From Heptranchias perlo (lineage: Eukaryota): DNA of 64,000 nucleotides. The stretch's first letter is position 1. Each line of letters starts with the position of its first letter. Location of the stretch: NCBI RefSeq assembly GCF_035084215.1, contig NC_090335.1, forward strand, positions 52,328,001 to 52,392,000. Direction: 5' to 3'. The position numbers and the translations under genes are program-made. The notes under the pieces are model-generated. The model did no database searches. It saw only the letters and a list, made by a program, of their open reading frames with translations, and was not told the origin of the DNA. Shown in pieces: positions 13,000 to 40,644 of the stretch.

Positions 13000-13703
13000 T
13001 TATTCAATTATAAGCTAAAACTTTATTCATTTCTGTATTCTTTTTGTAAAGGATATGTCCTGTACACTTAGTAAGCTAGCAGCTTTTATCCCATGTCTGA
13101 TGCTAAAAGCTGCTAGCTTACTATGTCTGATGCTGTATGTCTCACTATCAATGCCTTTGTATATATGTTGTAAACCGAATATGTTGTATACCCATCAAAG
13201 CAGAAGGGCTGAGTTTGGAGAGAAGAACAAATTGTTTTGGTGACAAGAGAAGACAGGCTAGACAATTCAAAACTATCACACAAGCATACCAACTGGATAA
13301 ATATTGTACATCTGAATGATCGACATCTTCAGTCCAAATGGTATACAGATCATTGTCTCCAGTGCAGACGTTGTTCAGTTTTCATGATATGCTCGTGTAC
13401 CACTGTCAGTATTCATGCCGTCTGTAAAGATAGCCCAAGTAGAAACATCCTGGAGTTACGTTGTGGGATACCAACACAATAAAACATTTCAGGGTAGATT
13501 TTCCAAGGACCTTGCCTGTGCCGAGCTCACCTCAGTCTAATTTTCTGAAACAGGTTCATGACATGCAAGGTACCTCATATGAGCAACAACTTGGAAATCC
13601 CATCCTTAAATGTGTTCATATGAAATTTAGCACAGACATTAACCCCATGTACCTGATAAACATGCGTTTCAGGAATAAACCAACTTTTTTTTTATCTCAA
13701 CAG

Positions 13704-13739
13704 AAACGAAGAGGCAAGGGAGGGAACGACATTTACCAG
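13704..13739 (+). CDS. CD247: CD247 internal exon (exon 7 equivalent): KRRGKGGNDIYQ
   Basis: Acceptor tttatctcaacag and donor gtagga; 36 nt. Resembles mammalian RRRGKGHDGLYQ. Confidence 0.92.
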
Positions 13740-14150: not shown

Positions 14151-14234
14151 GGACTGAGTAAAGCTACACAAGACACATATGACCAACTGCAAATGCAGCC
14201 ATTATCAGCTGTGCCTCCACCCCCTCGTCGCTGA
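14151..14234 (+). CDS. CD247: CD247 last coding exon: GLSKATQDTYDQLQMQPLSAVPPPPRR*
   Basis: Acceptor tattttgcag. Resembles mammalian [21 protein letters not shown] and completes ITAM3, YQGL-x7-YDQL. Confidence 0.93.
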   Translation, partial: GLSKATQDTYDQLQMQPLSAVPPPPRR

Positions 14235-15782: not shown

Positions 15783-18700
15783 ATTTTGGTAACATTTTGA
15801 GGATAAAAAAATGAATTCACTAATCCAGCTTCAGTTTCTGCTTTTGGGTGACATTTTTATCGATAGTACGTCAGCAAGTCAGAAGTTGCTGACTCAACTA
15901 CAGCTACTACTAATTACCTTAATGCCCTGTATTAGTCATTTTTTATTTGCATTCTGAAAATAAGTTTCTGGTTGCTTTATAAAGCAGCTTCCTTTGTTTA
16001 TAATAATGAATGCAGCAATCAGACCAAGTCCATCTTAGCACAGCAGTTTGACTACTCTGTAAAAAGATCTTTGTAAAGATATGCATCTATGAACAAACCA
16101 AAGAACTATTCATAATTACATTTAGACAGATCCAGAAAGGTGGTGAGATTAGTTGTTTTTTGTTTCAGAATGAAAGGGTAACCTGAATGTCTGTAAAGGT
16201 GAAATTAAAATAATTTTCAATTTGTTACAATTTGAACAAGCACTCCAGGATGCTATTTGTTAACTTATTTTGAATGCGGGCTTAACTGATTTAGAGAGAT
16301 ATGATTCTATTTCTTGCTTAATTTTCTTTTACTGTTGCTTGAAGACATTTTTAGTCGTTCATTTTACACATTTTTATGTATTTAAGTTTTCTGTAATGCC
16401 TGTAAACTTTTCTGTATTAAAAGTGGTAGTTATCAAGATTGTTTTGAATATTAATAATCCTTTGCTTCCTTAGTCCTAAGAACAGTGTCATTTGGAGAAT
16501 CCATTTTTCAGTGAAGCCCAACAGTTTTTTCCAATTGACATGATTACATCAAAATAGATGAAAGTTTGGGAACTGTTGGGAGTGACAAAAAATATTTTAT
16601 CGCAAATTGACCATGAGAATGCATTATGCTAAGTGTGCATTACAAACTGAGCCATTTACACTGAATAGCACAAACTGTACAATAGGCAGGATTTAAACAA
16701 TATAATCTCGAAGGTGTTGGTGAGGCAGGTTTCTGGCCTGGTTCTAACAATGTCCTGTAAGAATGAGAAGGAAAACAGTCCCATTAGTTGGCATAAATAA
16801 TTCCTCCTTGTATCGCAGCCACAGAAAGCCAACCAGTTAATTTGTTATGACAAGTTGTGGGGCGTATTGAGTGTCCTATAACAGCATAAAATGTAAACAG
16901 GAAACAAAATGAGCACCAAGCCTTTGTAGTGTTATAAACAGTGATACAATAATAAAGAAAAGCCTTATAATAAGAGTGGCACATTCATCTTATTCATCAT
17001 GGGAGTGTGTGGTGACATCAATACTCATTGTGGCCGAGTACTAGTCCAGGTTTTTCAGTTGGTTTGTTAGCTTTATTGCTTGCACAGCGTGAAACAAATA
17101 TTTATCCAGACAAGTTCAGCCACCACAAATTGCTTAAAAAACACACAAAAAATCTTTAAATGGTGGACAAAGGATAAATTACTGGTGATTCCAATAATTT
17201 TCCAATGTGAAATATGCATCACGATAATTAAATAGTGAAATTTAAAAATAATTTACTGCAACGAGTTAAAGATATAACCGTAGAATAGCTATAAGCACAA
17301 TCAATCTTTGGAACACAAGGACCGATTACGTAATCTCAGGAGAATGCAGCCGCCTATTCCTGCTCAGTAACTCTTGAGCGAGGAGAAATGACCTTGAGAT
17401 TGCTGTGCATTCAAACACACTCACCCAACTGGAGGGAAGCTCACCAGATTTGGTGGGGCCAGCTAATTTTAATAATTTACTAATGGTCCCTGTGCAGATT
17501 GAGTCTTGCAGAGGGGCCATAATGAAGGGGTTTGCTGAATATGAAGGGCTGCTGCTCAGACTTAAAGACAAATGGCCTTGTATAGGGAAACCAAAATTTT
17601 GGTGGCTTTTTCCAAGGCTCAAAAACGATCTCAACAGTTTACAGCGTTGCAAATGCTGCCCGGGGCGGGGGGGCGGTGGTGGAAGAGGCAGGAGGAGTGG
17701 TTAAAATCAGCATGTTATAGAGGTGCTGAAACAGGTCTGCGAGTAAATAGAATGGTGCTGCCCCCAACCCTGTGTAATGGCAGACAAAATTTATATTCTG
17801 TGCTTAATGAACTGGCTTCTGTGCTTAAGAAGGCTTGCCGTTTTTCATCCCAGGGCACTTTCCCCACAGATTATCAATGCATTACATCTAGCAGAAGGTG
17901 GCAGCCAGACTAGAATGCTGTCTGAAGCACCTACAGGACTCAAACAGATGCAGAAGATGGCACTTTAAAGAATTTGGCAAGGGAAGACTAATTAATAGTA
18001 GCATGCACCAGGTATACAGCACAGGCCACAAAGTGTAGCTGTCAACCTGTTGTGCATTTACTGCTTGCTCTGCCATGCCTGCAGACAACCGTACAGGTTT
18101 TCAATTGCATCGCATACATACCCATACCTCAGCAGGCCACAAAGTCAAGATGCTATGTACAATTGGTACCCTTGCCACATTCACATCTTCCAAGGGCTTC
18201 TGGTTAGAAATGGCAGCAATCAGTGATCCCATGCACTTTGAATACCATGTGTGCCCAATATCGCCACATTGATGCATTTTTCAGTGTGAATGGAGATCAT
18301 CGTTGACCATGCTGACCAATGCAACAAGTCATCTTGATGCATGCAGTACTTGATATTGCAACGCAAGTTGGGACTGAGCCATAAGTATAACAATTGAGGG
18401 CTGGTGCTGAGAAGGAGTTTGCACATAGCGCTGCTCTGGTAAAAACAGACCAGTTTTGGTGCTATTTCAACTAGAATTTAGAAATAAATACAACAGACTG
18501 GAGATACAAGGTATGTGTTTTTCCTGGATGATTAGCACAAACCATTTAACATTAACCATCAAAAACGCTCAAGTACTCCAATGAGTGTATACTTCAAAAG
18601 AATGGACTGCGCAGAGGTAAGCAGAAAATAACTAAGTTTACCATCAGGATTTTAAGTCAGATTTTTAATGAACCAAGACGCCATTACAAAAATGAATACA

Positions 18701-21700
18701 AAATGATTAGATAAAATGACCACATTACAATACAAAAAAATCTAGCTGCAATGGAATTCTTTCATGGCAGTTATTGAAGACAGTTTTATCTGCAATGACT
18801 CACTATACAATGGAAATGATTTTGAAAAGGAAAGTTAGAAACCAAAGAGTACCTTAATGCAGACAGAAGCAATATTGTTAAATTTGCATTTCTAATACAA
18901 CTGAGCAGTTCTCAATTATCAAGAATACTTATCGCTGTGTATCTGGTTCTACAATAAATTAGAAAAAATAGGATTTAGTTTGAATAGATATTTTTAAATT
19001 AAAGGGGTGGGGAATAAATTAACACCTTAAAGTTCAAATATTTATCCAATGTACAGCAGACCAGACTACTGGCCATTTAATATGGCCCTAAAACCAGACA
19101 GCATCATGTAAAATCAGAGATATGTGCAATTATTTAAGTCAAACTTTTTTAAAAAATCTTAAATTCAAGGAATGCTGTTGTCACACCTTGATTGGAAAGA
19201 ATTGAAAAATTGTGCTCAGTTATGGTTGTCACCTGCTAATTTAGATCAGTTTATTTGTCTGGCTCTTGTGTGGAACGCCCGATACAGGTTGCTAGTTCCA
19301 GTCAAACTTCTACCTACATATTGGCTGATGATTTACCTACTTATGTACATTTCATGAACCAGTTTTCTAAATGAAACATGTTAGGGAGGCAAGATCATTC
19401 TCATCCTCCAGATAATTAGTTCATCGACCAGAGAAAAACACAGATGGGAATTTTAAAAATGAATAAGCTGAAAAAGTAAGTAAAATCTGTAAAAGCTTGG
19501 TTATTGATTCCTAGCTAGAATTTGGCAATGTTTACTTTTGTGGATATAAAATCAACTGATGTAAATCTTTCACCACCTTCAATTTCCTACCTAAATTCAT
19601 CATCCAACTAATTGTCGAGTCAATGGTACTATTTACCATAAACAAGCTAGCTATATTTTTGTTCCTTACCAACAGGGCACTGCATTTTAAATTAAATTCT
19701 GCAATCACAGCTATTTTGTTAGTGATACGATCATCTGTAATAGACTACTAAATTTTAAGTGTTGTCAGTAACTTCCTACTTCTGACACCTTAAAAGATAA
19801 TCAATTGCTTCAAAATTAATGCTGATCCCAAATACTAACGTTGGTTCAATAATTATTCAAAATGTTGAGCCCCCTAAAGAATAAGAAATTCCTGACTAAA
19901 AAATGACAAAAATATTTTTCCAAAGTCATCAGTAGTATACTAAAGGCCCCATAATCATTGAAATTAAATTCAGTGGTTCCAGTTAAATTTATACAAATTT
20001 GTTAAATGATTGAATACAGAATTGAAAAAACACACACAACTGAAAAGATCTGCAAATGTGTAGCCATGTCATTCATGAACGAAATATTGAGGAAAAACTA
20101 ACACTACACGGGGCAGAATATTTAGTACCAGAAATAAGCAAAAACACCAAATGAAATCAAATAACTAAATTTGTCAAAGTGTAAAATTTAATATCCTGAC
20201 AGTTTAGTTCTTACAGTTTCCCAAAGGTTAATCTTTGCACTTCTAATTGAGTTCATCATGAGCCAGAAATGATACTGTACATTGTAAGTTCATATGGTTA
20301 TACCAGTACACAGCAATATACAAATCAATGCTTAACAATAATGCCTTACTGTTGCAATGTGTCAGTATACAATTACAATGAAGTGTGCATTCACACCAGT
20401 TTATTGTTGGAAATACTTTACACACAACATAATGTCGCATTCCTGCTACTAACCTCAAAGGCTAGAGCCATTTTAAACTTTCCATTACCATTCTTTAAAA
20501 AGATCATGCCATTTATTGTATAAAAAAAATTCACAGTAAAATGTTGCACAGCTGAAAACGAGTTAAACTGGAACTGCTGCATTAGTAATACAAGACATAC
20601 CATCCTGTGATGTAACAATTCTGAATCCTAGTGAGGGTCACGTTTTTAAAAAAATCTGTATGGACCTTGATGACTACAACTTGTTGGTATAAATGGGGTA
20701 AAATTGTTACTTAAACTTTTTTCCTCATTTTGCTTCTTTCATTTTCACACCATTAGTTTTTTTTAAATCTGCTCCTACCAAACTTTTCTCCTAGTCACTT
20801 TAAATGAAGTGGACAATTGACCATTAATTCAAAATATTTAATAGTCATGATAGCTAATATATAGATTAATTTAGATTAGGCAATACTGCTATCCTTACAG
20901 CTATACCTTGGTGAACAAATGTATATTTAGAAGGTTGCTATTAGCCAACTGACATTGATGTTCATTTATAGGCACTGTAGTACAAATCAATGGCAAAGGT
21001 AATAATTTTTTTCAAATTTACATACACTAGGTTTACGAATGGAGAATTTTAACTTTTATTACCTAATTGTATCTTGGAAATACCTTTTCTTAGAAACTGG
21101 TTAAACTTTCAAGTTGCTAGTGTTTTACACTAAACCTTTTAAACACATTGTGTTAGTTCTGCAAACTACTAATTAGTGGTCCATTTTAACATTGTCAACA
21201 TTGTTCAGTTGGGTTTATTTTCAAATCACTGGTAACAGACAAACTTTTCTTGAGAACTGTGCAATTATTTCCTCTCATTTAATAAATGCTGCTTTTCTTC
21301 AAGATCAGTTTAACAAAAACACTGAAGACCTCTTTCAACTGGGTGGGAAAATATTTAGATCAATGGTTTGAGGCAATCATTGAAAATAGCCAAGTAATAA
21401 ATCAAACTATTCAGAGGACAAGCATTTTGAGATCATGCTGACAGACACTCAATGGGACAGACTGCTCCAGTTTGTAGTTAATGAGAAGACAAGGGAGATC
21501 CTGATCATCAGAGCACAACAGTAAAACATTTTCTAGGCAATCAGAATGGTTGCCTCAACACAGGATCAAATTAAATAGTAAGATATTTATCCAATTATAT
21601 GGTGAAATTGGAAGAATTAATAAAGGCCCATCTGTCAAGCAACTCTTTTGAATCAAACTTAAAATCTTCAGCAGCCACTTTGTATGACTTTCTCTCATAA

Positions 21701-24544
21701 CATTAAAGAAGGAACCAGATTTAGAATTATAAGCTATTACTTAAATGGCTATGTAAAACCTCACTTGCACATCGATTTAGTAAATGGAAGAACTGGATCT
21801 CTTTACAAACCCAAAGTAAAAAATGTATTCTAATAGCAAAGATTTTAGAAAAAATTTAGTTTGACAGGCTAATTCCTCTTGTTTCATGCCTTATAATTCA
21901 ATTTCTGTAATAACCTCTCCAATTCAGTATAATGTTTTATCAAGAACGGCTTGTTTTCCATAAAGAGCACTAAGGGGTCTTCATTAAGCAGCCTGTAAAT
22001 TACAAGCCAAACACAAGGTTGTTTAATGTGGCCAATCCCTTTTAGGTGGTTCTGTCAAATTTTCACACATTTAGGAGGCGAATCCTTAAAAGTTTAGTAC
22101 ATTAGTTTTCATAGAGAGCAATGCTACCACTTAATGAGGAGCAATGCTGTTACAAATTAGTTGCAATCTCACTTGCAGTTCATCAAAGCTAGACATTTTC
22201 AGTCATAGATTAAGATTTCTATCTTTTTGGAAAAGCTTCAGCCATGCATCCAGAAGAACATCACAGGTAGTTGTCTTTATTACCACGATCTGAAGTAGTT
22301 TTGGACTGATTCAAAAATATACAGACCATATTCAGTGCAATTGTTCTGTAATCATACAGGTTTAACTAGTATTGCTCAATTACCAATTGGTGAATCTGGG
22401 AAACTGGAAAGCAAGAATGTAATAGTCCACAAGGTTGCAATACCCTGCGCACCTTCTCTCTTCCACTAAATATTGATGTTTTCACAAATACTGTTGTTCT
22501 TTAAACCTTCTCTTCAAATTACAGAAAAAAAGGTCATCTTGATGAAAGTGACACATTGTCTGGCAAACAGATTTTTACCGCAATTGTTTATGCAAACTAT
22601 ATTCGTGGCTTGAGTGTCTATTGGATCTTTTTGAAGACAGCATTCTAAAATATCACCAATTTCAACCACCGTTGTTTATTGTTACTATTGAAATTTTCAG
22701 CATATATTTTAGGAGAACTGCATCTTGCCCCAGAACAACAAACCCTTCAGGTTACCATTTTGGATGTTTTCCTTCAACTTTTGAGTTGTTGCCAATTGAA
22801 TTTCAGTTTAGGGCTTTTTGAAACATGGCTGGTTATCCCAGTTCTACCAAGAAGTAATAGCAATTAGTACAAAATGTGCAAGCAGAACAAGCAGCTTATG
22901 CAAAGAAAACAAACAGAGGCATCTTTAAGGAATGGCTGCAGTAAACTTAAAGCTAAGTTGAATCCTCAACACTAAGATGCTGTCACTACACATTAGCTAC
23001 TGTTTTTTACGACATTTGCACTGGTAAAGGTCTGACATTTGTAACCAACTATCAGAAATTTATATTAAAAATTGTCAGCATACATATGAACACACTCAAC
23101 CGTGGTACTGCATTAAGGTGCACTGGATACAGGGACGTCCGCAGGTTACCTGTGCTGCAGTCTTATTGTACAAGAAATACAACCATGCACATGTGGGGAT
23201 AGTTCAATGCAGTTGAAAACCTTACAGTTACACCCGCTGAGTTGTTGCACATCTTCATTCAGATATAATGAGTTAATAAATCATGAAATTTACTCATTGG
23301 CAACAGTATCCCTTTTTTCTTGGTCTTATACAGAATACATGTAAAAGACCACCAAAAATCATATCTACATATCATTTCAGGCCAGCAAAAGCAGTTTTTT
23401 GCTTTAGTTCCCATAATTCCTGTTTTAAACAAGTTGAAATGTGATCAGATGTAACCATCAGGTTCATTCCTTGGGAATGTTTACATTAGTGATGTGGTCA
23501 CGTGAAGTTACTGAATCAGAGAATTACTTGGACTCCTCATTCTGCCACCCATCCACTGAACAGCATGCATGAAAGTTAAAAGTTTTACCACCTTCTTTAA
23601 AGGAGGCTTATTGACAGTCCATGACCAGAGGGTGAGAAGGAAGGAATACCCTGAACCAAAATGAGTAATTTAAGATGCTGGAAAAGGCAAAATATATTGC
23701 CCATTTTCTAGAATTTTATATTTAACACATAACAGTAAACACCGGTAACCACATTTTATATTGGTCTGGTTGGAAATTTTGGGATTCATGCATTCCTAAT
23801 GAAAAAGTTTACACCTAATTGAATTATTTTGTGACTGAGCTGGATATAAATTATTTTTCAAAAATTGGATTTAGTTTTCAAAGACATTATGTAGATATAC
23901 ATTTGTTAAATAAAAAAAGGAATACTGCCTATTGAAAAACTTTTTATAAAAAAAACCTTCCAATAAATAACACATCTAAAGAATATAAGCCTGCGGACGT
24001 CCAAAATTGGATAATATGTACACTTTTAAAACTATGAACAACTAGGCAGTGAAAAACAGTTATGTTCTCACACACAAAGACACACCCAAAACATACAAAA
24101 ATACTATATCTTAAACTACCAAGTAAGACGATTTAATTTTTTATCTCATGCCATGACTTAAGAGCAATACACTGAAACGAACAAGGATTTGACAACAAAA
24201 AAAACCTTTTATCCCAGAAATATACCAAAATATACATCTAAGCTTTGGAATTACTGAGGTTAGACTAATGCCTGCTGGGTAATTGCATTTAATACACAAT
24301 TCTAAGGTTGCAAAGAAGAAACAAATCTTTGGTATCTGCATTAGGCGAATGTTAACATTTGTATTTTGCTTTGGGATAGAGCTTGTATGATCCTACAACC
24401 CCCATTTAGTACTCAAAAAAAATTTCACTGAACACAACATATCCATCCTTCTCCACACAAAAAAGTACTCAGTCTCTATCTAGCACAAGGTTGAGGAATA
24501 CAATGCATAGTTGCACAGTGGTATTATGAAAAGGAGATGAAACC

Positions 24545-24780
24545 TTTGTAAGCAAGCTACATCTTTTTTAGTCTTCATTTTTCTTTCACAAAATTAAACG
24601 GCAGCGTCCAGCCAGTTACAGTCAGTTCTGAAGAGCACCTCAGTGTGTATTAATCCAGATCACCCAGCCCAAAGGGATAAATGCCCCTCAGAAGAGCCAA
24701 TCCTACCACAGGAGTCTCCAGTCTTTTAACCAATCAAATAGCACATGGCGCTCCACTTTCAGCAGTCCCTCTACTGCTTT
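24545..24780. other. Conserved block apparently homologous to mammalian CD3eta exon 9 (antisense to the Oct-1 3'UTR)
   Basis: The + strand reads QPKGINAPQKSQSY...TWRSTFSS, against recalled mouse CD3eta RPKGESTQQSSQSC...PWPPSSSS. It is preceded by a polypyrimidine tract and by NGSVQPV (cf. DSHFQAV) in another frame. Confidence 0.55.
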
Positions 24781-27700
24781 GGTAGACAGTATGAAGCAGA
24801 TTTCTTTTACTTTATGCAATTCTTTTGTCACTGTAAGCAATTCACACTTTTGAAATAAGATTAGTGTAAGACTGAAGACATTAAAAAATTTTTTTAGTTC
24901 ATACAATCATTAATAAGTCTTTGGTTTTATCAGCACAATGTAAGGTTGCTGGCATGTTTCAAAAGCACTGAGCATGGCAGGAAAGACCATCACTAACTTT
25001 TACATTCAGAGTGAGTGCTATTCTCAGGGTATTTTTAATGATGGACACAACACCCTTCCTGATCTCATACAAGATTGTCAAAACTGAACAGCCATTTGTT
25101 ATTCAACCAATATTTGGCTACTAGCACTTCTGTGCAATGGTCTGTTTGGACTTGGGTATAGCTGAGGGATAGAGCCAACGAGAAGAGTTACTGCACAGTG
25201 ACAACTCTACAGGGCAAGGTATGAAGACATATTCTAGTTTCCAATTAACACAAATGCACCTCATCAGGGATTAGGCTTGTGGTATATAAGCACATAATTT
25301 TTGTATTTAAGTGTGGCCTTAAGAAATTGACAACGAAGCTCCTATTATAAGTGAAAGCATCAATAATCATCAATAATTTGGGCTGAATGTTTAAGAATGT
25401 ATTTATCCATCTGATTTACTTAAATAATAAAAATTCAGCAAGTTAAATCAGCCTACATTTTCACTTAACTAGGGTCAATAGCCTGCCCTGATGACCAGAG
25501 ACGAGAGTTTTGGTCGCCGAATACTGGGTTGGCATCTAGCGGGAGTGGAATGGTGACCCGCCATCACATCTAGCCAGTTCTCTGTAGGGAGCTGTGAGTC
25601 AGGCTAATGACCTGCCTATGTAAAATGGACTTTGTTATGGAAACAGCCCAGAGCAAGGTCTGCTGGATGTAAAGCAATGGAAGAAATGGGTTGCCTCATG
25701 TGCCGTTAGGCACTGGTGAGAAGAAGTGGTTCAACAGTTTGGCTAAAATTTCAGTGGGAGATAGAGGTGAGGAGGGCATTAAAGACCAAGTAAGATGAAC
25801 ACAATGAAATTAAGGGATTGCAATATGCCCAATGTTTACTTAAACTTTAGTTGTCAATTCTGACTGCTGTTATTCTCCTGCTGTGCTAGTGCTGATACAT
25901 GCCAGATTTTTTTAAAAAAAAAGTATACAGTCAGTGGCAGGTTCAGCCACTCTGAGGGGGGAGATTAAAGCGAGTTACTCAGTCACGAGTTAGAAATGAG
26001 GTATACAACAGCTCCTGTACCTAGGACAATTGGTGACACCACCATTTAAGCAACTGAGGAAGAAAATGAAATAATCATACCAGGCGAGTAGATAGTGTAA
26101 CTTACAGGCATTTCCACTTAAAATTTGTAAGATGCTCAAGTAAAATAGGTCACCAGACACGGTTTTCCTCCAATCTCATAATTCCAGTAACAAAAACAAT
26201 CATGTAAAGTCTTGCTGCACCGATGACTCCACTGAATAACATAACTTCAAAACCCACAGTTGCACAGGACGTAACAATCCCTAGGGTAGTTAGAGCAGTC
26301 ACAGATACTTTCAAGTTCCTAAACTTCTATTTGGTAACTGACGTTAAGATATTGATAGCTGCTGATTTGATAGTACAATCATTTTTAAAAAGGTATCCCA
26401 ATGTACTGATAACCAAAATATAATGGAATACAATAGGGCACTTTTACTGAGAATATGAGATTTCTTTCCTCAGGTAATTAATCCCTACCACAACTAAATT
26501 ACTAGTATATCACAAATTGAATGGTCTATAATTAAGCGAACAATAAAACAAAACCCAGTAATTTTTGCTGCAGATCAAGACTGTGACAATATCCCAAATG
26601 CACCAGAGTTTTCAAAGGTCTTTACTGCAATGGTCTTATGCCAGCTTCTGCGATTATGGTATATCAACTTTGATGCTACTAAAAATGGGTGCCCCCAAAA
26701 AACAAGTTTGGGTTTGCACAAAAGTAAGTAACTGTATGATTGTCCTATGGTAGATGTGATGCTTTTAAAACTTATATGGAGGCTTTTATTTGGGATATTT
26801 GAATAAGGTTGCTATAAAGATCACACAAAGTTAACTATGCAAACCTGTCTGGTATTCATAGCAATCGTGGGGATAAATCTGACGTAGAATTTCATTTTCT
26901 TCCTCAGAGTTCCTTCATTTATTAATTTACTATACAACCTGATCCATACTTTTGTTCCAAGTGCTCTTCTTGTATAACTGAAATGGATGCATCAAGACTT
27001 TTTCTTTTTTACATCTTTCTTCAAGACTATGTAGCTCTTTACAAAACCAGCCACTAAAATGAGAATCAATTCTACCTTCACAACCCACTAGGGCACGTCT
27101 GTTAGTAAATTTTCATTTTTTTTTTAAAGATATAAAACTCAAGGTAATCACCCTTCTGTACTTTCAGAATCCTTAATTTAGTTAGTTGCTACTTTTAATT
27201 ATTCTAATTGAATGTCATCAATTAACAACTGAACTACCAATTTGGTTTTCTTGCCTTTCCTTATCAATTCAAAGTGAGGACTTTAATATCAGTGATGAAG
27301 CTGTGTGTATCTACCAATTAAAAGTTAACAAATTTATTTTGCTTTCTTTGAGACTTGAGGTGAAAACAGGAGGGGATGAATAACAGCAGGTTTAAAGGCA
27401 TATCAACAGGTGAAAAGTTTGTTTAATTATAAATTGTTATCCTATATAATGGAGGAGGGGGGCTTAAATGTAGGCATCAAATAATGATCTTACTGCACAA
27501 GAAAACACAGAGAAAATGAATAATTGGTTACCCCATGGTAAAAGGAAAACAGTATGATTACAGAATTTTTGTAGCATTTCAGACCTCAAGTCAAATTTTT
27601 TAAAACCACAATTTCACTATGTTTCTCTATACTTGTAGGTTATAAGTTAATACAAGGGCATATCAAAGAAAGCATAATAAAGCTCAAATGGTCATACATC

Positions 27701-30700
27701 ACATGCTTCCTTAAATCTGAGTCAGCTGCGATGCTTTCACTGGGTGCTTCATACGAATACAGTATCAAGAGCTGGGCAACGTTTTTAATACTGCAACAGG
27801 GATGAGCAAAAGTTTTGGAATATTTCAAATTTCTTCTAGGAGGGGGAGCTACAAAAAGGAAAAATGCTCTACAGATTGCTTGGAGCTATAGCAGGTGAAT
27901 ACTGAACTCCCAAAGGGGTAATTTCTGAATCCTTTATCTCAAATGATAATCAAACTCACAAATGTCACAAACAGAAAATATCACTAACGCAGATTCAGTT
28001 AGGTGGAAGGGATAAAAAGTATGCTTTTTTAAAAATAAAAATTAATTTGTAGCAATAATGAATAGCTAAATAAATAGAAAATGGATGGAACATTTGGGAA
28101 ACATAGGAATACCGAAATCATCCAGACACCATGTGAACTTTTCTTGCAATTATAAAGTAAACCAGCAACAAAGAAACCAGAAATAATAGTTTTTGATATG
28201 TATTTGCCCAGAAAAATAATTTGGCCCTGCACTCAGAAGCCAACAATAACCGGATTACTAGAGAAGAGTGCTTGGCAGCAGTGCAAAAAGCTGGCAACAC
28301 TAATCCAGCCCAACCAAAAAAAAGGTTTGTTATATGATCCCTCAATCCCAAAATTAATGATGAATAAAAAGGAAAATAAAAAGTGATTAACTAAATATAG
28401 GAAAAATAGTTGCATTTTATTTGAAAGTGGATTATTCTTTACTTGTGGAGAAATTGGAGGACAAAAAGCTGCCTGTTGACAATAAACATTCCCAGGCAAG
28501 GTTTGTGAACTCCAAACTTTTTGTTCATCCCTATACTACAGAATGTTATGACTAAGTGATTTGGTAAGTATTAGCTTAACATGACCAGACCTAAATCATG
28601 GTGAGGATAACTGGATATTTTAGGAAAGAAAATTCCTTCAATTACCTTGTTTGGTGGGGCAAGTTAAATTACCAAATATCTTGACACATCAATTTTAGTC
28701 TGGAGTATTGTATTGCCCAACCCTGGTACCACCATAAATTTCTAATACAAGTGCACAGAAAACATCAACACTGACCAATATTCATAGACCATCATAAATA
28801 CCAGACTATTGCTATATGTAATGGCACTAGAATGGTATTAGTTAAACAGGGCTCATAAGTGTAGTTCTTCAGTGTCACCACTGCAGCCCTCTCCTAGAAT
28901 TTTTAATTGCCCACATACTATCTAGTTTTGCAATAACTTTGGATATTATTGATATTAAACCTACTCTAATGAAAATATGCTGTAATAGGCAGGCAAACCT
29001 TGGTAGCCATCTATTTTTGGAAGGTAGCACTATAGCTGAATTAGTGATAATATTTAAGGGTGTGCAATATAATGCATTTATTAATATTGTTTTCATGCTG
29101 CTTAAAATGTAAACTACAATACTTAAAAATATAAATATGATATAAAATTTAAATAGTATTTTTTTAAAAAAGCAAACCAGATTCAAAAAGTCAGCCATTT
29201 CAAAATGTAACCAATTAGACATTTTTCACAGCTAGATGTGTTATATTGCGTGAAACTTAAAAGGAAACTGACAAAAGGCAGGAAAAAAACACTAAATGAC
29301 AATAGCTAATTTAACACATAAGTCATGTAGCTAAAAACATAGAATAATGGTAAATATAGCCCAAAATACATGTACAAGAGGTTAGATGGATAAAGTTGCC
29401 ACTTCAGTCACTTGATGTAGTCAGTTATATGGACTTTTTCCAACTCGTCCTCATGACACATAAATTGCACACCCCTAATATTTGCCAGTACAGAACTGTA
29501 TCTTCGAAAAGTCAAATCATGCTATTGATGATTCATAGCAACCTCTGAATACAAATGTCAGATTTAAAATGACTGCTGAATCCATCTGTATGACACAATC
29601 TAGTTCGATACCTTGAGATTACCACCAAATTGCTGCAAATTCTCATTCCACCAACTGAATGCAAAAAGGAGAGCTAGGATAGTCAAAGTGTTAAGCATCT
29701 GTTACTCCAAAGCACTAACCAAATGCCTGGAGACAACTGTAGCCACTTATCAACGCAACTGTTCTTTGATCAGTCAAGCAGGTGCAAGGAGCAGGATATA
29801 TTTTTGGTCTAGACTGAATTATTTAGCATTGCTATCAACAATAATAATAATACAAAGTTAAAAACTTACTCAACTATTAGTGTGACAAACACTACATTCA
29901 ATTTACAACACAAATAAAACATTTTCACTTTTTCCTTTTTTTTTAAGAAAACACCTTTTCTATAGTGGAACCCTCTCCCATCCCCTGACATTGTTGAACT
30001 AACCCCTTTCTAACAAAAGGCCAGTGGAAAATGAATGGTATGGTACTGCTTAAAAATGAAGAATACAAATCTTAACTAGTTTAAAAACAGTGAGATGAGG
30101 CATGCTAAAACTTAGGCCACATATTAATTAATAAGAGTTGCAAAAGAAGGCATTTGCTTTGGCAAATAGAATCACAAAGTAATTGATTTCTTTCTTTAGT
30201 TATCAAGATCACCTTTTAAAAAGAGAAACTAAATTCATAAACATTTTTTTTTAAAGTACAGAATATCACCCAAAAATCAACATCTACATTCTAAATCTAC
30301 AATCATATCCACCAGGAATAGTTTTTGCGTTTGCAAAGCAAGCCTGTAATTGCTAAGCTATGCTGAGGTATTTCTTTTCTCATGGAAAGATTGCAATGAT
30401 GGAAAATTTTGCTCACGTTCTATTTATAGGGTGCAAGATCTGTCTCATTTCCCAATGAAAATGTTTGCACAAATAGCTTAAAGCCAACTCTTTTAAAAAG
30501 GATTTTTCATAATATAGTGGATAACATTAGTATGGTGCTCTAATGGGATTTCCCTCCACCCCCGATTTAGTTCATCTAAAACGGGGCAAATGCATCATTA
30601 TTTGATTTTAATTCTTGGTCTCCCTATTATTTACACAGGAACCACTCAATGCCATACAGCTTTCAGAAAGAATAACGACATGGTGTAAAGCTCATGACTG

Positions 30701-30885
30701 CTCCATAAACCTCTAACAAAAGCACAACTTAAATGGGGCAAATGGAATATCAGTTTCCTCCAATCAGCCCAAAGATAGAGTTCCCTGATATGGCGCTCAC
30801 CCTACCCTACCATGATAATCATATCAATGACAATCAGCGACTCATTATTCCAGCAGAACTACACAGCATGTAAGGACATTACTGC

Positions 30886-31158
30886 TGCTAGAGGATTTAA
30901 GATAATTGTCAAAAGAACCAGAGGGGAGATGATAAGACTTTTTTTTACACAGCGAATTATGATGTGGAATGCACTGCCTGAAAGGGGGGTGGAAGCAGAT
31001 TCAACAGTAATTTTCAAAAGGGAATGTGATACTTGCGTCAAAATTTGAAGGGCTATGAGGAAATAACTGGTGAGTAGGATTAATTGGATAGCTCTTTCAA
31101 AGAGCCGACACAGGCATGATGGGCCAAATGGCCTCCTTCTGTGCTGTAAGATTCTATG
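30886..31158 (+). mobile_element. CR1 3'-end fragment
   Basis: RGFKIIVKRTRGEM..FFTQR..WNALPE followed by the tail ggcctccttctgtgctgtaagattctatga. Confidence 0.85.
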
Positions 31159-34100
31159 AATTCCATGGATTATCGTAGGACAATTTCTACATTTTGTGCT
31201 CGGGAGACAATCTGATCACATCAATACGGGTCCTGTACAATGTTTTTACCAACTGATTTTTAATAATGAAACGTTATGTCTGTAGAAAGGGACGGATCTT
31301 ATTCATTTAAAGCTTTATTCAATAGCACTTGGTTTAATAGAGTGCTGTCATATTTGAAGATGTGAGATATTGCCACAAGTAGGGAAATGAATCCCCAAGA
31401 GTTACAGTGTCAGTTTTACAATCAATTTAAATGTGATGTTTTGTTTCGGGGAGGGGGGAAAGAGAGAGGGGGGAAAGAGAGAGGAGAGAAACAGAGATTA
31501 TACACTATACAGATAGATATTATAAATCTGTATCAATTAAACTATCATTTTGATTACTAGGAGCTAATGAACCATGATCTAAACTGTGTTTGTAAATACA
31601 ATATAGGTGCCTACAGGGTTAGACATTCTCCACTTCAATTAAGTCAATTTCTAAAAACTGGATACGGCATATCTTCTAAAAGGACCATTATAACAGCGTT
31701 GACCTGGTTGATGGTGCCTGTCCCGATTGTTTGTGGCAATTTTGATACTAAAAACTTATAATATATATTTTAATTGATTCTCTGTTGGTCACATCCCCAA
31801 ATAAGAGTCTATAAAGTTAGGGAGCAAAACGTAAAATAAAAATATGCACTTCATTTTTAAATAATGCAAAATTGCATTCTTATGATGCATCAGAACAAAG
31901 GGCATAACAACTTGTGGCAGAATATTAAACTAAAATAACTTTTTAGAAATTATTAGCTATTAGCTGATCAAACTGTTACAAATATGATCATGCGCTTGTG
32001 TTAGAACTGGGCAAAAAGGGAAAAACCTTCAACGTGGAACTATGACTCAATCTAACGCTTAAACTGAAATGAGGTATACTTGTGTATGTTTAATGTACAT
32101 CAAAATTATTTGGCTTAGTCCAGTGTACATATACACACTGTAAAATTTAGTTTGTGGCAATTTTGGTCAAGCCTTTGAAGGCCAAAGTCAAAAGCTTGTT
32201 ACTTAAAGGTTAGGAACGGCATATACATGCATTACAAATATGCAAAATGTATGCACATAATACATTCAATTTTTTGTAATTAAAATTCTGAGATTCAAAC
32301 ATATATACATATAAAGCATGACCAGAAATAAAATGATATATTCCAAGGATATGGGAAAATAGATCAGATTGATATGAGGAGTCACATTTAGCCTGGTTTA
32401 TTTTAGAAACTGACTTTTTTGTGTAACTTCAACGAAAATATACAAATTGCACCAACAGAGGGCCAGTTTTAGACTGTGAACTCAAGAACTGTATTAAAAT
32501 TGCCTATGGTCTTCTCATTTACAACCCTCAACAGCCTGAGGAGGAGGAATATTTGAGCCCATGTCTCAAAGGCAATAAGACAGCATTTGAATTTGGTAAT
32601 GCTACTGAAATACCTCAACTATAAAATTTTGCTACCATCTGGTTATGGGATTTCACATACTTAGGTTTGAAATTTAATCCCCTAACATCCAAAACTTTCA
32701 AAACAAAAAGATCTAGAAAAGCTTCTGCTGCAAAAAAAAATGACTGAAAATACCAAGATTAAAAGTCAACATTTTAGAAATTTCTTTAAAACAGAGGTTA
32801 GGAGAGTTCAGAAACATGGGTAAAGTATTCTTCACAAAGAGAAAATTGATGGTTAATTATCAGTAAGAGCACTTCCAGATTTCAATATTTCTAAGATGAA
32901 TGTTTTATGTTTTAATGTCAATATTATCCCACCTTAAATAGCAGCTTCCCTTTTACAAGCTTTATTTACTGAACTGAAAAAAGTCAAATTCTATTCAAGT
33001 GGATTGATGTAATAAATTAGTATGTGACCTACTTTATTTTAAGCCATGGAAAGATGGCAAAATGGGACAATAGCACAAATGGTGGTTTTAATCAATTAAG
33101 AGCATGAAATGTAATCATAACAGCTCTGAATTATTTTCTGTTACCAATTTAAATTACTCATTTTAACTGTTAAACTCAGTATTCCCTATATTTACCCATA
33201 TATCATTCAGTTTCAAAAACTTGCTAACACAACCCATCCTATAGACACACCTCAATGTCACATAAGCCATCAGAGTCTGCAATGTTGGTGCAAATGGTAC
33301 TGCCTAGCTCCAATTTGTACAATAGCAAAACAGTTTCCCGAATGAAAATCATGTTTTGATCGCTTCATCCTCAAATTAAGCAGTATTTTCTTTGCAACAG
33401 ACTAATAGTGATATAATGACAGCCTTTGTAGCAAAATATTAACCCTTTAAGGAGTACAAAATTAGAGTTTTCCCCATCTTATTTTCAGTTGTCTTATTCA
33501 CAGACACAATGAAGATTCAAAACTAGTCCAGTTGGATTCAAAACTTAAATACAAACTGAGGTCTGATGTCAGCTGCAAAATGTTACTTTAAAAATTTCTA
33601 TGGGAGAATTTCCTCAATTTCTGTTTCACTACCCCTGTCAATGACCAGCATTCAGTTTTGTTTTGAACTTAAAACTGAGACAGCTACCTTTAGTTACACC
33701 TCTAAGCTTATTTTTCTTCTCACTGCTTTTTGGAATATTTGCCATTTATGGAGCAAATGACTTAAGTAGAAAAATCAGGTGCAACAAAAACGCTCTCAGA
33801 AACTGTAAAAGCCATTAGTCCTCAAAGGGGTTAGCAATAAATTGATGAACCAGTTTTGTCTTCTAATCAAATCTACTTACCAAAATAAAACAATATACAA
33901 TGAAAGCAGTCCCCAAAATACACTGGACTGACTTCAGTTGTACTAACATAGGCTGAATGTTGAAACTTACCCAGCCAATTTATTTTCTATATGCCAAATG
34001 CACCATTCCCTAAATGAAAGATTAATTGGGCAATCTGTTTCCAAGCCTTGAGCCACGCTACCTGGCAGGTAGGAAATGTGCAAGTAAGCACAGGTCGACT

Positions 34101-36806
34101 CTAAGAAAGCATCTCACCTTTATTCAAACACCCAGCTAGCATTAGGTACTCATGGGGAAATCTTTCCACGGCATCGCACATTGTATTTGTGGACAAACAC
34201 AATTCAGCATTAGGCTCTGAATCAATTTATTGTTGAAACTGATATGACTGTAGACAGCGAATCTTTTAAGATAGCTTTCATTGCATAGTTTGTACTTTTG
34301 ATACATCATTAATTCTTTCCATTCGCAAGAAACTATGCACCTTTTTGTATTTTGGGTGTCATTACAACATAGTGCAATGGGAGACAACAGTAATAAGGGT
34401 AGATGTTTCATGAATCTGCATTGGGTGGGTGCTGGGATCACAGAAAGACCTGGAGAAATTGTAAATCTCTGCCATAGGAGGACTAAAGGATTTCAGTTTA
34501 CATTTGTGCATGGGGTCCAAACGTTTCCTACTTGTCCATAAGCCCAGAATCTACTATTGGGAGAGTAACAATATTCCTCTAAAATTTGATTGACTATCCA
34601 GTGAAAATAGTACAAGAGTACATCAACTAGGATACAAGTACTGCAGCAGTACAATCCTGAAAACACCAGTACAATTTGTCACAGGATCTATCTGTACATT
34701 TTAGACACTCTTAGGACTTGAATACCTTGAAATAATGTTTTCAACCTCTGTAATATCACTATCACCAGTCTACATTTAGCCATCCAGTAAATTTGAATTG
34801 CCCAATGAAAACTGGTTGCACCAGACTCTTGACAAAATGGTTACTACTCTGCAATAATGTAAAGTCCATGTTTGAAGATTCCTTTACCTGAAAAACGACA
34901 TTAAAAAGTTGAAAATAGTAACTGTTTACCTTTTATGAACAGTAGCAACTAAATTACTGATGCCTATTAACTGCACTCCTGCAAACAATGTCATTGGTAC
35001 AGCAGCTAGGTAAAACTGACTTTGGTTCAAGCTTTAATAGCTGTCCATATTTGGTAGGCAGCCATATTCATTTTGTTTGCAGTTTGGTAGTGTAACCCTA
35101 CCAATACTGCAATTTTTATGTCTTGAAAAGGAGATAAATGTAGTTACTAACAGGGGAAAAAAATGGTGGCTGTCATTTTTTTTAAGATTAAGAAACTAGT
35201 TTAGCTGCATCCAGTTATTGTTACCAGCACAAAGAACAGCACTAACCACATACACTCCAATGACAAAATTAGTTGAAGTGCCCAGTTTGTTTAAGTAAAT
35301 GTACACACTATCTCTGTGCAGCATTATGGGTGAACAACACAGTCAGCAACAGAGCACAGGGATGTCCAGATGAACACTCACTTGATTCAAGCATATTATT
35401 TATTGAAGAATCAGTTATGTGTTTATCAGGAAATATTATGTGCTTCTGGACTGAAGCAAATTGTACCCCCACATTCATTTCCAGTGGGCAACTCGGCACA
35501 AAGTCCATATGTAACAGGTAACTAAATTTGCTGTTGTTCATTAACCAATTGGACACAATAGACAGCCTGGCCACAGTAATCATTTAGCTTGTAATGCAAT
35601 CCTTGCCCCCACTTCCATAAGCACATTGACAGAAAATGACAGGCACCATTTTTACTCCATGTGAACTGCAATGCTCTACTCCAGTCCTTTAATTTTTGGT
35701 TTTAATACGCTTACAGCAATGGTTCAAGCCATACTGTGCATACTGTAAGCCTCTTGTTTCAAAACAACCCTATTTTCCATTACAGATAAACAAACTCCAA
35801 ACTGAGCCAACATTAGATACGTTATCAGGCCCTACAGGGAACATACATTATCTAGTTTCTATAAATAAATCAGTTTCTGGAAACTGGGCAGTGAATGTTC
35901 CCCTCTGGAGACCACTTTTCACTGTTGGCCTGGTTTGGATTGTAGTTTGCTCATCTCTATCATTTTCCATGATGGTTCCAACTGGTTCCAGTATCTGAGC
36001 AAAGACAAAAGCTTCACAAGACACCCATGATCCACTGACTATAAAGTCTCCTCCATTTCCAGTTGTTCAGCCGAGTGGATCAATATCTCTGATGGTATGA
36101 CATTTGCTAACATATCCAACCATTACATTTAGGTTGGACAGACATACTAAGCCATTTTAAAAACAAAGAATGTTTTTAAAACCACCAGTTTGTGAACTTT
36201 TGTCTCAATGCATCAATCTTTGAATCTTTCCTACAAAAATAACCAACAGTAAACCACTTTATACAAACGGTGCATAAATCTACAGTGTACCCGACAAGGA
36301 ACAACCTTTTTTTAAGAAAGGAAACCATTTCAAGAGACATTAGCAAGAAGAAAAAAAATAAAAACCCAATGTAATTTTCTTAACGGTATACACAAGGGAA
36401 AAAAAGATGCACAAGCATCCCAAGTACAGGCCTGCCTAAACTGTACCAGTTAAAGAAACCCATGCTATTTATACATGATATAAACACCTTTATGAAACAA
36501 AAAGGCCTGTACAACAGACCTAATTAAAATAAACACAATTAAAAAGAACTAATAAAATAGATACTAAGAGGAGACAGAACCCTTGCCTATGCATTGTTAA
36601 TGACTCCTATATTGTTACGACCGTCTGAAACGATAAATATTCACGTGTTTCCTTTTTGGTAAAAGTCTTTTTTTTGTCATTTGTGACACAATCCTGAAAA
36701 ACAAGCAAGTTAAAAAAATTAGGCAAACATCAGTTTTGCTTTAGCTGGAAGCAGCCAACTGAACATCCCATTACTGGATTAAATGATCCACTCTAGGGAT
36801 TACGTC

Positions 36807-37105
36807 TCATTGGGCCTTGGTGGTGTTGGTGGCCCCGCCTGCTGAGTTCACAGTGAACGAAGAGTTCTGGCTGGAATCAGCTGATATAGAGGCCGTCTGG
36901 AGACTGGCTGCTTGTCCAGTTGCCCCGGCAGCGGATATCAGGCTTATGGCTGGGTTGCTGGTGAGTAAGGAGAGGTTTTGTGGGTTCAAAAAAAGAGGGG
37001 CTGTAACGATGTTTGGAGTACCCCCTGGGTTCGCTGCATTGGCAAACAATAGATTTCCACTGGCATCAAAGGAGGTTATAGGAAGTGTTCCACTAGATGC
37101 AAGCG
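36807..37105 (-). CDS. POU2F1: POU2F1 (Oct-1) last coding exon: (A)[51 protein letters not shown]...TTKAQ*
   Basis: Acceptor tttttctcag, phase 1; TGA at 36807-36809. [21 protein letters not shown] and the KAQ end match the Oct-1 C-terminus. Confidence 0.95.
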
Positions 37106-38920
37106 CTGAGAAAAAAAGAGAAAAGAACCCAGATTAGAACAAAAACTAGCCTTGCAGAGCTATTAGTATCATTATTAGTATATCGAAAAGGGAAATAGAG
37201 TGGAAAATGGTACTCCTAGTGCTTGGCTGACATGCACATTAAGAATATTGATAAAAATGTCCAAGCAACAAAAAAATGTATTATTGGATGTTGTATGTGA
37301 ATGTGATGAAATGAACATAAAACATGAATTTTAAGTTCTATTCATCCAAGTTTTTCCAATATCTGGCATGAAGAAAGAAATGTGTAAGTTCTAGAATCAT
37401 AAAAATCCGTTTGTAGTAACAAGTACTGCAAGCTTCTGTTTTAAAAAAAGGTCGCTTAAAAACTGTGACTCTGAACCTATGTGTGAGATAACACATTCCA
37501 TGTGTGTATTCATTTCTTTTGTCTGATTTTAGCCAAGGCGTAACCCAAGTTAAAAAAGGAATTTCATGTGAACATGTTAAACTTTTGTATGCTCTTATCG
37601 TTTACTGTTTGATGTGCCTCATGCTGCTTAATTTTACGAATCAATACATTTTACTTTAATTCTCTTATGTTCTTGTAGCCTGAATCTCCTTCCATCAGAT
37701 GAGTTGGTTATATCCAATTTTTCTATATGGGAACTGCAGATGTTCACATCATCAATTTTTTTTAAGGCAACTCAAGCCTTTTCTGACAACCACAAAAAGA
37801 TCTTTTTCTAAAAGAGCCTCTTATACAGCCGAACAAGAGATCATTCAACTACTCATGAATAATTTTCTTTAAGGGTAATACCTCAAGTAATTCTCGCTGT
37901 GGGAAGATTGCTTTTGTGTGTGGAGGCTAAATAAATGAAGAACATACAATTTCAGGTGGTATGGTTCCATAGAATGTTCAAGCACTATTATGTAGCTTCA
38001 TAGATTGAGAGGTTACACATTCATTTCCCGTCTCTTCAGCTCAGTTCACAACTTCAGCTATGCCATTGTGAGGAAGCACCATACAGAAGCCCGGTAGCAT
38101 CCCACATGGAGGGAGGGGAGTGTCATGTTTTATGTTAATATTGTTATTTATATTTTTCAGATTTTTTTTGTCCTTTACAATAATAGCTATATTTCACAAG
38201 GACAAATGCTATTTAAGACTGACAAAGTTTAGCTTCAGATTTGGAAAATAATACCTTAACAAGAATTCTAGCAGAGGCTGGGCTTTTAGCTCTGCAGGAG
38301 ATTCTGAATATTTCTTCATAGGTCATTCTCTGATGAGGACTGGATCTTTTGGCCTTCTCTTTGTCGGACACTGAAGCACTGAGTTTGTCATTTTATGACA
38401 CGAAGTAACATTTTTGTACTAAATATTTGTTAGGTTCATCTAACGTTTCCAGTGACCTTTTGCGCAGTTTCATCAGGATATCAAGGAAGAAATAGTCCAA
38501 TATGTCACACATCTAATATAGAGGACATTTCCATCTCGAGGATTGGCAAAGTAATTTTTGGATCTCTCAATATTTGATTTATTATAAGCTATAACAATTC
38601 TTTCTCAAATGAGAGGGGATTTTGGCTGCCTTTCCAACTTTATAAATATTTTACAATATGAGCAACAATATTGAAAGCCATTTTTCCATATGTGACAGAT
38701 ATTTAACAATTTTTGTTACAGTTCTAGAGTATATTAAAATATAAGATATCACCATTCATTAAAAATAAAACATTTTTGAGGCACTACAACATTGAGATGT
38801 CATTCTTCCTTCAACTTGAAAAGCACTGACTTTTTACAAAAGGGTAGGACACATTCTATAGAAAGATATTCTCGTTTGATACAGGGTATAGTGGATATGC
38901 AGGTTTCTGCAGTTACTGAC

Positions 38921-39009
38921 CTTGAATAGTTGCCAGTGTGCTATTACTCATTAATGCTGGACTGAGAGCACCACCAAGACTCCCTGGATTCAGACTTAGT
39001 AAGGCACCT
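38921..39009 (-). CDS. POU2F1: POU2F1 penultimate exon: (G)[29 protein letters not shown]
   Basis: Acceptor tttttatag and donor gtcagt; 89 nt, phase 2/1, compatible with both neighbours. Not in the ORF track. Confidence 0.95.
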
Positions 39010-40644
39010 CTATAAAAATGAAAAACAAATTGATTTTGTGTTTATTTACAGATCATATTTTGCAGGAAAATATTTATGCAAGCTGCGCTGCGTAATATTG
39101 AAATGTACATCACAATGCAACAGAAATTATAAACTTTTTTTTTGGGGGGGGGGGTGGGGGAGTGGAGGAGAAGGGAGTCCAATCGAACATTTTAATGGCT
39201 TAGGACAAGACAACTAACCTACCGACCACTTCCAATTTTCAATACTGTCATGACTTTCATGCTCTGACTGCTCTGCAGACGCTACCTAAATGATGGTAAT
39301 AAATCTTATATTTAAAAAATAAAATGGATTATTCACCAGATTCAGGTCAGAGCACTTGGATCAATGAGAGAATTCATGTAAACAACATCACTACAACTAT
39401 TTGCATGTGTGACCTCCTCACTCCTGACCAGTTTACTTCCGTATAATTCCATATAATTCCTTCTTGTAGTTACACGGCACTTTCAAAAATCTAACTATAC
39501 CAGTGAATAACTATACATGCGCCAACAGTTGAAAAATTACAGAAATCAGAGGTACAACAGGCACTATCACCCTGCCCATGACACCGTTAGAAACTTGACA
39601 GCTTAAAGGTGATGGTGACCGTTCACTTCAAGAATGATGATGTTTCACCTTTGAGGAATCCCCTTAAATAGTGACCACATTCCCTGAAACACCAACTATA
39701 TAAGATGAGGAAAACAGTTTGTTCTCATGTTAATGTTACATAACTCCATTGACCAAGAAGGCCCCAATAAATGCAACTCTATTTAAAAAAAAGTTCAGAG
39801 GCATGATCAGAAGTCACATCTTAACCACCTTGATATCAAGTTAAAAAATCTCTGAAGCTTATTTTAGTAAAGCATCTAAATGAACATCAGTGATAAATCA
39901 AACATGAATTTTAAAGAAGAGTGATCCTTCGGAAATGTGTATACATTTAAAAAAATGACTAGGTTGATCACACAAGAATACGACAAATATCATGCGGGAG
40001 TGGGGAAAAGAGGGGACATTTCAAATTGGATGAAGAATTGATTTAAAGTGGGGGGAGTTGTAAATTGGACTATTTCCAATAAGGCAATAAGATAAAACTT
40101 GAGACTTTCAATATTTATTTTAAAGAAGAGCAGTATGCCTTAATTAAACTTCTAAAACTTTATTGATTTAATGAACAGTTAATAGCTTTGAAAAATAACA
40201 AGAAATCTACTTTTTGAACTGTGTTGTAATAATCCAGGCAGGTGCTATTATTTTTAATTAAGTTACTTGGCCACCATTCTTAGCATATCATTTAATTTCT
40301 TCTCACTTCCCAGAAAAAGTAAAACGGCCAGTGAACCTCACATGAGGAAGCTTGATACCTATTTGCTAAAGCTCACTGGTCAAAACAGAGGCATCTCCCT
40401 TCTCTGACTGCAATGGGGGTAAAATCTGAGGAGAGCCTTAATGTCCAGAGCCATGCAGACCAGACCTAAGTTATCAGTCAGCAGCTTGTAGTTAATGCTG
40501 TGGAATCTAACCACTGCCCATAAGAATATCAACAGCATGATCTTGCTTTGCATGAAGTACCAGTGGAGGCTTCTTTAGTGGAAGATCAATTTCTAATACA
40601 AACACTTGTACCTGAGGTCCTGCTACTATTTCAATGTGAGAAAG

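What the first reader, a model, noticed from the sequence alone, without database searches (positions are those of the whole stretch)
24545..24780. Apparent non-mammalian precursor of the CD3eta exon, antisense within the distal Oct-1 3'UTR
Known: in mammals CD3eta arises by splicing CD247 exon 7 to exon 9, which lies antisense within the long Oct-1 mRNA. Seen: 10 kb past the CD247 stop, the + strand encodes QPKGINAPQKSQSY...TWRSTFSS, with the same PKG-x4-Q-x-SQS spacing as my recollection of mouse eta (RPKGESTQQSSQSC...PWPPSSSS). AACGGCAGCGTCCAGCCAGTT (24597) resembles the DSHFQAV exon start and follows the polypyrimidine tract ttcatttttctttcac. The matching acceptor position reads AA rather than AG, and the two matching blocks are in different frames. 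Inference: this is an ancient POU2F1 3'UTR element, conserved at nucleotide level, that mammals later exapted as a TCR exon by gaining an AG.
Basis: partly seen in the sequence, partly recalled or inferred. Interest (0 to 1): 0.9.

Follow-up and report, generated by a model that had tools for sequence, protein, structure and literature searches.

The report
Unproven CD3-eta look-alike behind POU2F1
The stretch is single-copy, non-coding-looking DNA about 12 kb past the POU2F1 (Oct-1) stop codon, most likely the far end of that gene's very long 3'UTR, and its claimed likeness to the mammalian CD3-eta exon is no better than chance as quoted and could not be checked against a real mammalian sequence here.

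Summary
CD247 (+) ends at 14232-14234. POU2F1 (-) ends at 36809-36807, confirmed by Pfam POU2F1_C (E 5e-33). The block lies 10.3 kb past the first stop and 12.0-12.3 kb past the second. It sits in a 24-kb interval almost free of the repeats that fill both genes' introns.

The peptide QPKGINAPQKSQSY...TWRSTFSS is a real + frame reading. However, the 73-codon frame has no start codon until near its end and no Pfam match. An exhaustive search of 1.84 billion proteins returned only three bacterial repeat proteins. The dinucleotide before 24597 is TA, not AA.

The quoted likeness to mouse eta is 7 identities in 14. Random 84-residue tails reach that in 19 of 25 trials over the same search space.

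No mammalian eta or POU2F1 3'UTR sequence could be obtained. Homology to exon 9, strand of transcription and splicing therefore remain untested.

Best reading: ordinary distal POU2F1 3'UTR with a chance open frame. True orthology to the eta exon is not excluded (about 0.2). The same scan noted the TE-poor gap and the CD247 micro-exons on this window.

The parts
13703..13738 (+). CD247 exon equivalent to mammalian exon 7 (KRRGKGGNDIYQ). It has an AG acceptor and a GT donor and ends in phase 0.
   Evidence: sequence read directly...tctcaacag|AAACGA...TACCAG|gtagga.
14151..14234 (+). CD247 last coding exon (GLSKATQDTYDQLQMQPLSAVPPPPRR, stop TGA at 14232-14234), holding the second half of ITAM3.
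   Evidence: the only PDB hits are CD3 zeta chains, with 14 of 21 residues identical to the C-terminus; weak Pfam ITAM match, below the curated cut-off; sequence.
24545..24780 (.). The block of the finding. It is single copy within the window, with a local G+C rise to 0.47-0.48 against about 0.35 around it.
24574..24589 (+). The position it was matched to (before 24597) reads TA, so there is no acceptor there. The nearest AGs give first exon bases at 24572 and 24605, with 19- and 8-residue tails in phase 0.
24632..24850 (+). 73-codon stop-to-stop open frame holding QPKGINAPQKSQSY...TWRSTFSS. It has no ATG/GTG/TTG until the TTG in ...STALVD..., no Pfam family and no relatives.
24288..24293 (-). 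Candidate poly(A) signal ATTAAA on the POU2F1 strand, 250-500 nt beyond the block.
   Evidence: This is inference; 3' ends were not observed.
24294..36806 (-). Putative POU2F1 3'UTR of about 12.5 kb. This is inferred, not shown.
   Evidence: Position downstream of the confirmed stop, repeat-poor interval, no Rfam family.
36807..37133 (-). POU2F1 last coding exon (...[13 protein letters not shown], stop at 36809-36807).
   Evidence: Pfam POU2F1_C, E 5.2e-33, profile positions 191-280 of 282; 30 homologues, with the named ones being POU domain class 2 transcription factor 1.
16000..40000 (.). Interval nearly free of intra-window repeats. Its only repeat is a 227-bp element at 30939-31159, which is paired with 15562-15780. 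Both genes' introns are full of repeats.

Best explanation
The block is ordinary non-coding DNA in the convergent CD247 -> <- POU2F1 interval of a non-mammalian vertebrate. It is most likely the last few hundred nucleotides of a roughly 12.5-kb POU2F1 3'UTR transcribed from the - strand. The eta-like peptide on the + strand is a chance open frame, and the block is not a CD247 exon in this species.

Inferred: that the POU2F1 transcript reaches this far and ends near 24270.
For: - Gene map: CD247 exon 7 and exon 8 with its stop. POU2F1 homeodomain exon, best PDB match Oct-1. POU2F1_C in two exons, the last ending at 36807, with named POU2F1 homologues.
- The + frame of 73 codons has no usable start (one search lists no + ORF there) and no Pfam family. 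Against 1.84 billion representatives it finds only three bacterial repeat proteins.
- The - frame finds no candidate and no Pfam family.
- The dinucleotide before 24597 is TA.
- Chance test: 19 of 25 random tails reach 7 of 14 identities.
- There is no copy elsewhere in the window.
- The 16-40 kb interval is repeat-poor, as expected for a long constrained UTR.
- A candidate ATTAAA lies just beyond the block on the - strand.
- Seventeen small runs (77-161 million letters of contigs, guessed to be RNA) from five studies hold 39-97% of the words of 24000-25500. This is easier to explain if the stretch is transcribed.
Against: - No read or transcript evidence shows - strand coverage or a 3' end. 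The runs are only guessed to be RNA.
- PAS hexamers are frequent in this AT-rich DNA: 51 on the - strand between the two stops. The end near 24270 is therefore a guess, and the repeat-poor zone runs on to about 16 kb.
- The chance test used random tails, not the real eta tail.
- The representative library may not hold the eta isoform as its own entry, so the empty protein search does not exclude weak homology.
Confidence: 0.6

Rival explanations
1. One reading: the block is the orthologue of the DNA that became CD247 exon 9 (eta) in mammals. On this view it is an ancient POU2F1 3'UTR element conserved at nucleotide level, whose antisense strand later gained an acceptor.
For: - The position is right. 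It lies downstream of CD247 on its sense strand, inside the likely distal POU2F1 3'UTR. This matches the mouse arrangement named in the titles of Lerner 1993, Ohno 1994 and Koyasu 1994 (reference lists seen). Eta is exon 8 replaced by exon 9, in mice and swine (PMC8416054).
- Seven other coded organisms hold 38-59% of the 31-mers of 24000-25500.
- The interval is repeat-poor.
Against: - The likeness rests on recalled sequence and is at chance level as quoted.
- The blocks are in different frames, and the matched acceptor position is TA.
- There is no protein-level relative.
- A pattern scan built on the proposed conserved spacing found only one bacterial contig.
- The organisms are coded and may be close relatives, so their shares say nothing about deep conservation.
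Confidence: 0.2
2. The block is intergenic and not part of the POU2F1 mRNA. It is either neutral DNA or a regulatory element, such as an enhancer or promoter-like piece with two CCAAT pentamers at 24697 and 24730.
For: - No transcript evidence was obtained.
- A 12-kb 3'UTR is unusually long.
- Several PAS hexamers lie nearer the stop.
- There is a local G+C rise and a CCAAT pair 33 bp apart.
Against: - One such CCAAT pair in 64 kb is about what chance gives: 94 sites, about 1.2 pairs expected.
- CpG observed/expected is 0.26, so this is not a CpG island.
- Runs of RNA-like size hold the stretch.
Confidence: 0.15
3. The block is a working alternative last exon of CD247 in this species: an eta-like isoform lacking ITAM3, made by splicing exon 7 (ending at 13738) to one of the AG acceptors in 24570-24670.
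For: - Exon 7 ends in phase 0.
- Several AGs follow. One at 24572 has a 65% pyrimidine tract and gives a 19-residue tail. One at 24605 gives 8 residues. Those at 24644, 24659 and 24668 give tails of 61-69 residues.
Against: - No protein in 1.84 billion representatives carries the long tail.
- The acceptor contexts are weak, with pyrimidine content 0.41-0.65.
- Any 250 bp holds many AGs.
- No junction evidence exists.
Confidence: 0.05

Closest known systems
Mouse (and pig) CD3 eta: CD247 exon 7 spliced to exon 9, which lies on the strand opposite to Oct-1/Pou2f1
   Same: Same pair of genes in the same tail-to-tail order. The block lies downstream of the zeta terminal exon on the CD247 sense strand, within reach of the POU2F1 3' region (literature seen).
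   Different: - There is no acceptor at the matched position (TA).
- No single frame carries the claimed blocks.
- No spliced transcript has been shown.
- No verified sequence similarity exists.
Long 3'UTRs of vertebrate transcription-factor genes, here POU2F1
   Same: The block is downstream of a confirmed POU2F1 stop on the same strand, in a repeat-poor interval, with a poly(A)-signal-like hexamer beyond it.
   Different: The extent of the transcript and its conservation were not measured here.
Chance open reading frames in non-coding DNA
   Same: The frame is 73 codons with no start codon, no family and no relatives. About a dozen frames this long are expected in the interval.
   Different: It sits in a slightly G+C-richer patch than its surroundings.

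Membership tests
CD247 exon 9 (CD3 eta terminal exon) | Lies downstream of the zeta terminal exon on the CD247 sense strand, opposite to POU2F1 transcription | tested here: met
   The block is 10.3 kb past the CD247 stop on + and 12.0-12.3 kb past the POU2F1 stop on -.
CD247 exon 9 (CD3 eta terminal exon) | A 3' splice acceptor (AG) at the exon start, in phase with exon 7 | tested here: not met
   The dinucleotide before 24597 is TA. Other AGs nearby are unverified.
CD247 exon 9 (CD3 eta terminal exon) | One open frame from the exon start through the eta-specific tail | tested here: not met
   The start-like block is in the 24501 frame and stops after 13 residues past it. The PKG block is in the 24500 frame.
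CD247 exon 9 (CD3 eta terminal exon) | Significant sequence similarity to a mammalian eta exon or eta protein tail | not testable with these tools
   No eta sequence was obtainable. The exhaustive protein search found no vertebrate hit. The CD247 exon 7 query found no candidates. The recalled likeness is at chance level.
CD247 exon 9 (CD3 eta terminal exon) | Spliced transcripts joining exon 7 to this exon | not testable with these tools
POU2F1 3'UTR | Downstream of the POU2F1 stop codon on the same strand, with no other gene between | tested here: met
   POU2F1_C exon ending at 36807. No Pfam or Rfam feature lies between it and the block. Only short chance ORFs are present.
POU2F1 3'UTR | Continuous transcription from the stop to the block, ending at a poly(A) site beyond it | not testable with these tools
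There is only a candidate ATTAAA at 24293-24288 and runs guessed to be RNA that hold the stretch.
POU2F1 3'UTR | Conservation across distant vertebrates | tested here: inconclusive
   Seven other coded organisms hold 38-59% of the 31-mers, but how far apart they are is unknown. The pattern scan of metagenome contigs gave only a bacterial chance hit.

The most novel reading that the evidence does not exclude
The block is the non-mammalian orthologue of the DNA that mammals use as CD247 exon 9. On this reading, the CD3 eta tail was recruited from the antisense strand of a POU2F1 3'UTR element that predates mammals. The element would have been kept for POU2F1's sake and turned into an exon by gain of an acceptor.
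Probability: 0.2. Interest if true: 0.5.

Novelty: already known. Interest (0 to 1): 0.2.

Why it matters
If the orthology held, it would date the raw material of a T-cell receptor isoform to before mammals. It would be a clean example of an exon born on the antisense strand of another gene's conserved 3'UTR. That would also explain why the eta exon region is constrained and why disrupting it affects Oct-1 (title of Ohno 1994, seen).

As it stands, the window only shows that the CD247-POU2F1 tail-to-tail linkage, and probably a very long POU2F1 3'UTR, exist in this non-mammal. That is an extension of a known arrangement and not a surprise.

Tried and rejected
3. I tried to reach a CD3 zeta/eta protein id through the stop-free frame holding exon 7. 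No candidates were found. Other CD247 exons sit in frames too short for the length rule.
4. The exhaustive phmmer search of the + frame returned only bacterial repeat proteins. The - frame had no candidates.
5. A metagenome pattern scan for the proposed conserved spacing returned one G+C-rich bacterial contig, which is a chance hit.
6. Rfam found nothing in 24273-37200.
7. RNA folding of either strand gave z about +0.7, so there is no structure signal.
8. The dispersed-repeat explanation is rejected within the window. Genome-wide copy number was not testable.
9. The promoter-like reading from two CCAAT pentamers is at chance level.
10. The papers of Clayton 1991, Ohno 1994 and Koyasu 1994 are not held. 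Only their titles and one review sentence could be cited.

Full report
**What is there.** The window is vertebrate DNA with two convergent genes.

On the + strand, CD247 is present as small exons. An exon at 13703-13738 has an AG acceptor and a GT donor, reads KRRGKGGNDIYQ and ends in phase 0. The last exon, 14151-14234, reads GLSKATQDTYDQLQMQPLSAVPPPPRR and is followed by TGA. Its only hits among solved structures are CD3 zeta chains, with 14 of 21 residues identical at the C-terminus.

On the - strand, POU2F1 is confirmed three ways:
- The homeodomain exon (63225-62959) has its best PDB match in Oct-1 and matches Pfam Homeodomain.
- Pfam POU2F1_C covers profile positions 51-162 in the exon at 44679-44122 and positions 191-280 of 282 in the last coding exon 37133-36810, at E 5e-33.
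- Thirty homologues were found, and the named ones are POU2F1 of opossum, a frog and a salmon at 61-65% identity.

That near-equal distance to a mammal, an amphibian and a teleost supports 'non-mammalian'. So does a CD3 zeta terminal exon only two-thirds identical to the PDB CD3 zeta chain it aligned with.

The POU2F1 stop is at 36809-36807. The finding therefore lies 10.3 kb past the CD247 stop and 12.0-12.3 kb past the POU2F1 stop.

**The observation.** The dinucleotide in front of AACGGC... at 24597 is TA, not AA. The start-like block (NGSVQPV) is in one frame and runs into a stop 13 codons later.

**Is the + frame a coding remnant?**
- The stop-to-stop frame 24632-24850 is 73 codons and has no ATG, GTG or TTG until close to its end. 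The ORF listing finds no + ORF of 40 aa there.
- It has no Pfam family.
- An exhaustive HMMER search of 1.84 billion representative proteins returned three hits. All are bacterial repeat proteins matched through a serine/threonine-rich patch.
- The overlapping - frame (67 codons) found no candidate at all and no Pfam family.
- With stops at 6.2% of codons in this interval, about a dozen frames of this length are expected in the three + frames between the two stop codons.

**Is the likeness to eta more than chance?** I could not obtain a mammalian eta sequence from any tool, and sequence from memory is not to be used. I therefore did not align it.

I simulated random 84-residue tails of average vertebrate composition against the three + frames of 14235-36806. 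The best 14-residue window reached 7 or more identities in 19 of 25 trials. A single fixed 14-mer did so in 7 of 200.

As evidence, then, the peptide likeness is what chance provides. The test does not credit the rough colinearity of three blocks, and it is not a substitute for a real alignment.

**What the block most likely is.**
- It is single copy in the window and is not a tandem repeat.
- It matches no Rfam family and folds no better than shuffled sequence on either strand.
- A self-comparison of the window shows that 16-40 kb is almost free of the interspersed repeats that fill the introns of both genes.
- On the POU2F1 strand, an ATTAAA at 24293-24288 lies 250-500 nt beyond the block. 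By eye, a U/GU-rich stretch follows it. A transcript ending there would have a 3'UTR of about 12.5 kb.
- Seventeen small runs (77-161 million letters of contigs) from five studies hold 39-97% of the 31-mers of 24000-25500. Runs that small are unlikely to hold a given locus of a large genome unless it is expressed. However, the tool only guesses that they are RNA and says nothing about strand.

I therefore read the block as the distal part of a long POU2F1 3'UTR. This is an inference at about 0.6, not a demonstration.

**What could not be done.**
I worked from 24273 upward and masked them in local BLAST.
- The collections at hand hold no vertebrate genomes.
That is a chance hit.
The frame holding exon 7 found no candidates, so no zeta or eta protein id could be reached.

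**Literature.** Eta is CD247 with exon 8 replaced by exon 9, and it is seen in mice and swine (PMC8416054). Eta lacks the third ITAM (PMC13668506). The eta locus lies opposite Oct-1, as stated in the titles of Lerner 1993, Ohno 1994 and Koyasu 1994, seen in the reference lists of PMC2195880 and PMC2196153. The papers themselves are not held.

**Verdict.**
- The interpretation cannot be decided here, and the evidence given for it is weak.
- The arrangement itself, CD247 and POU2F1 tail to tail with a long POU2F1 3' region, is a known one, now seen in a non-mammal.
- The exaptation story stays possible (about 0.2). One genome alignment and one stranded RNA data set would settle it.

Noticed in passing
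window 16000-40000: A 24-kb interval nearly free of intra-window repeats. It spans the whole space between the two genes' ends and reaches beyond the POU2F1 last exon. The introns on both sides carry many repeat copies.
   Followed up: partly
window 11509-12102 and 55650-56243: An inverted pair of 594-bp copies, 97% identical, one in a CD247 intron and one in a POU2F1 intron. They look like young copies of one repeat family. Their open frames have no Pfam match.
   Followed up: partly
window 15562-15780 and 30939-31159: A 227-bp repeat, 77% identical, same orientation. One copy lies just past the CD247 3' end and the other inside the putative POU2F1 3'UTR. It is the only repeat found in the repeat-poor interval.
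   Followed up: no
window 41789-42424 (-), 5434-6129, 61107-61423: Related copies of a retroelement-like open frame (212 aa on the - strand at 41789-42424, with ...LEYCVQFWSPYLRKD...). It has no Pfam hit at E 0.01.
   Followed up: partly
The tool says this is no evidence of anything. They lie just downstream of the candidate ATTAAA on the POU2F1 strand. I did not search them.
   Followed up: no
window 7461-7592 and 11250-11393 (+): Frames holding likely earlier CD247 ITAM half-exons (...DNYSGLNFNKR... and ...NRSEPYGELK...). This agrees with the earlier micro-exon note. Exon borders were not worked out.
   Followed up: partly
L001 796-831 (-): The only metagenome match to the spaced pattern lies in a G+C-rich bacterial contig, in what reads like a membrane-protein gene. 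It is a chance match and unrelated to the window.
   Followed up: yes
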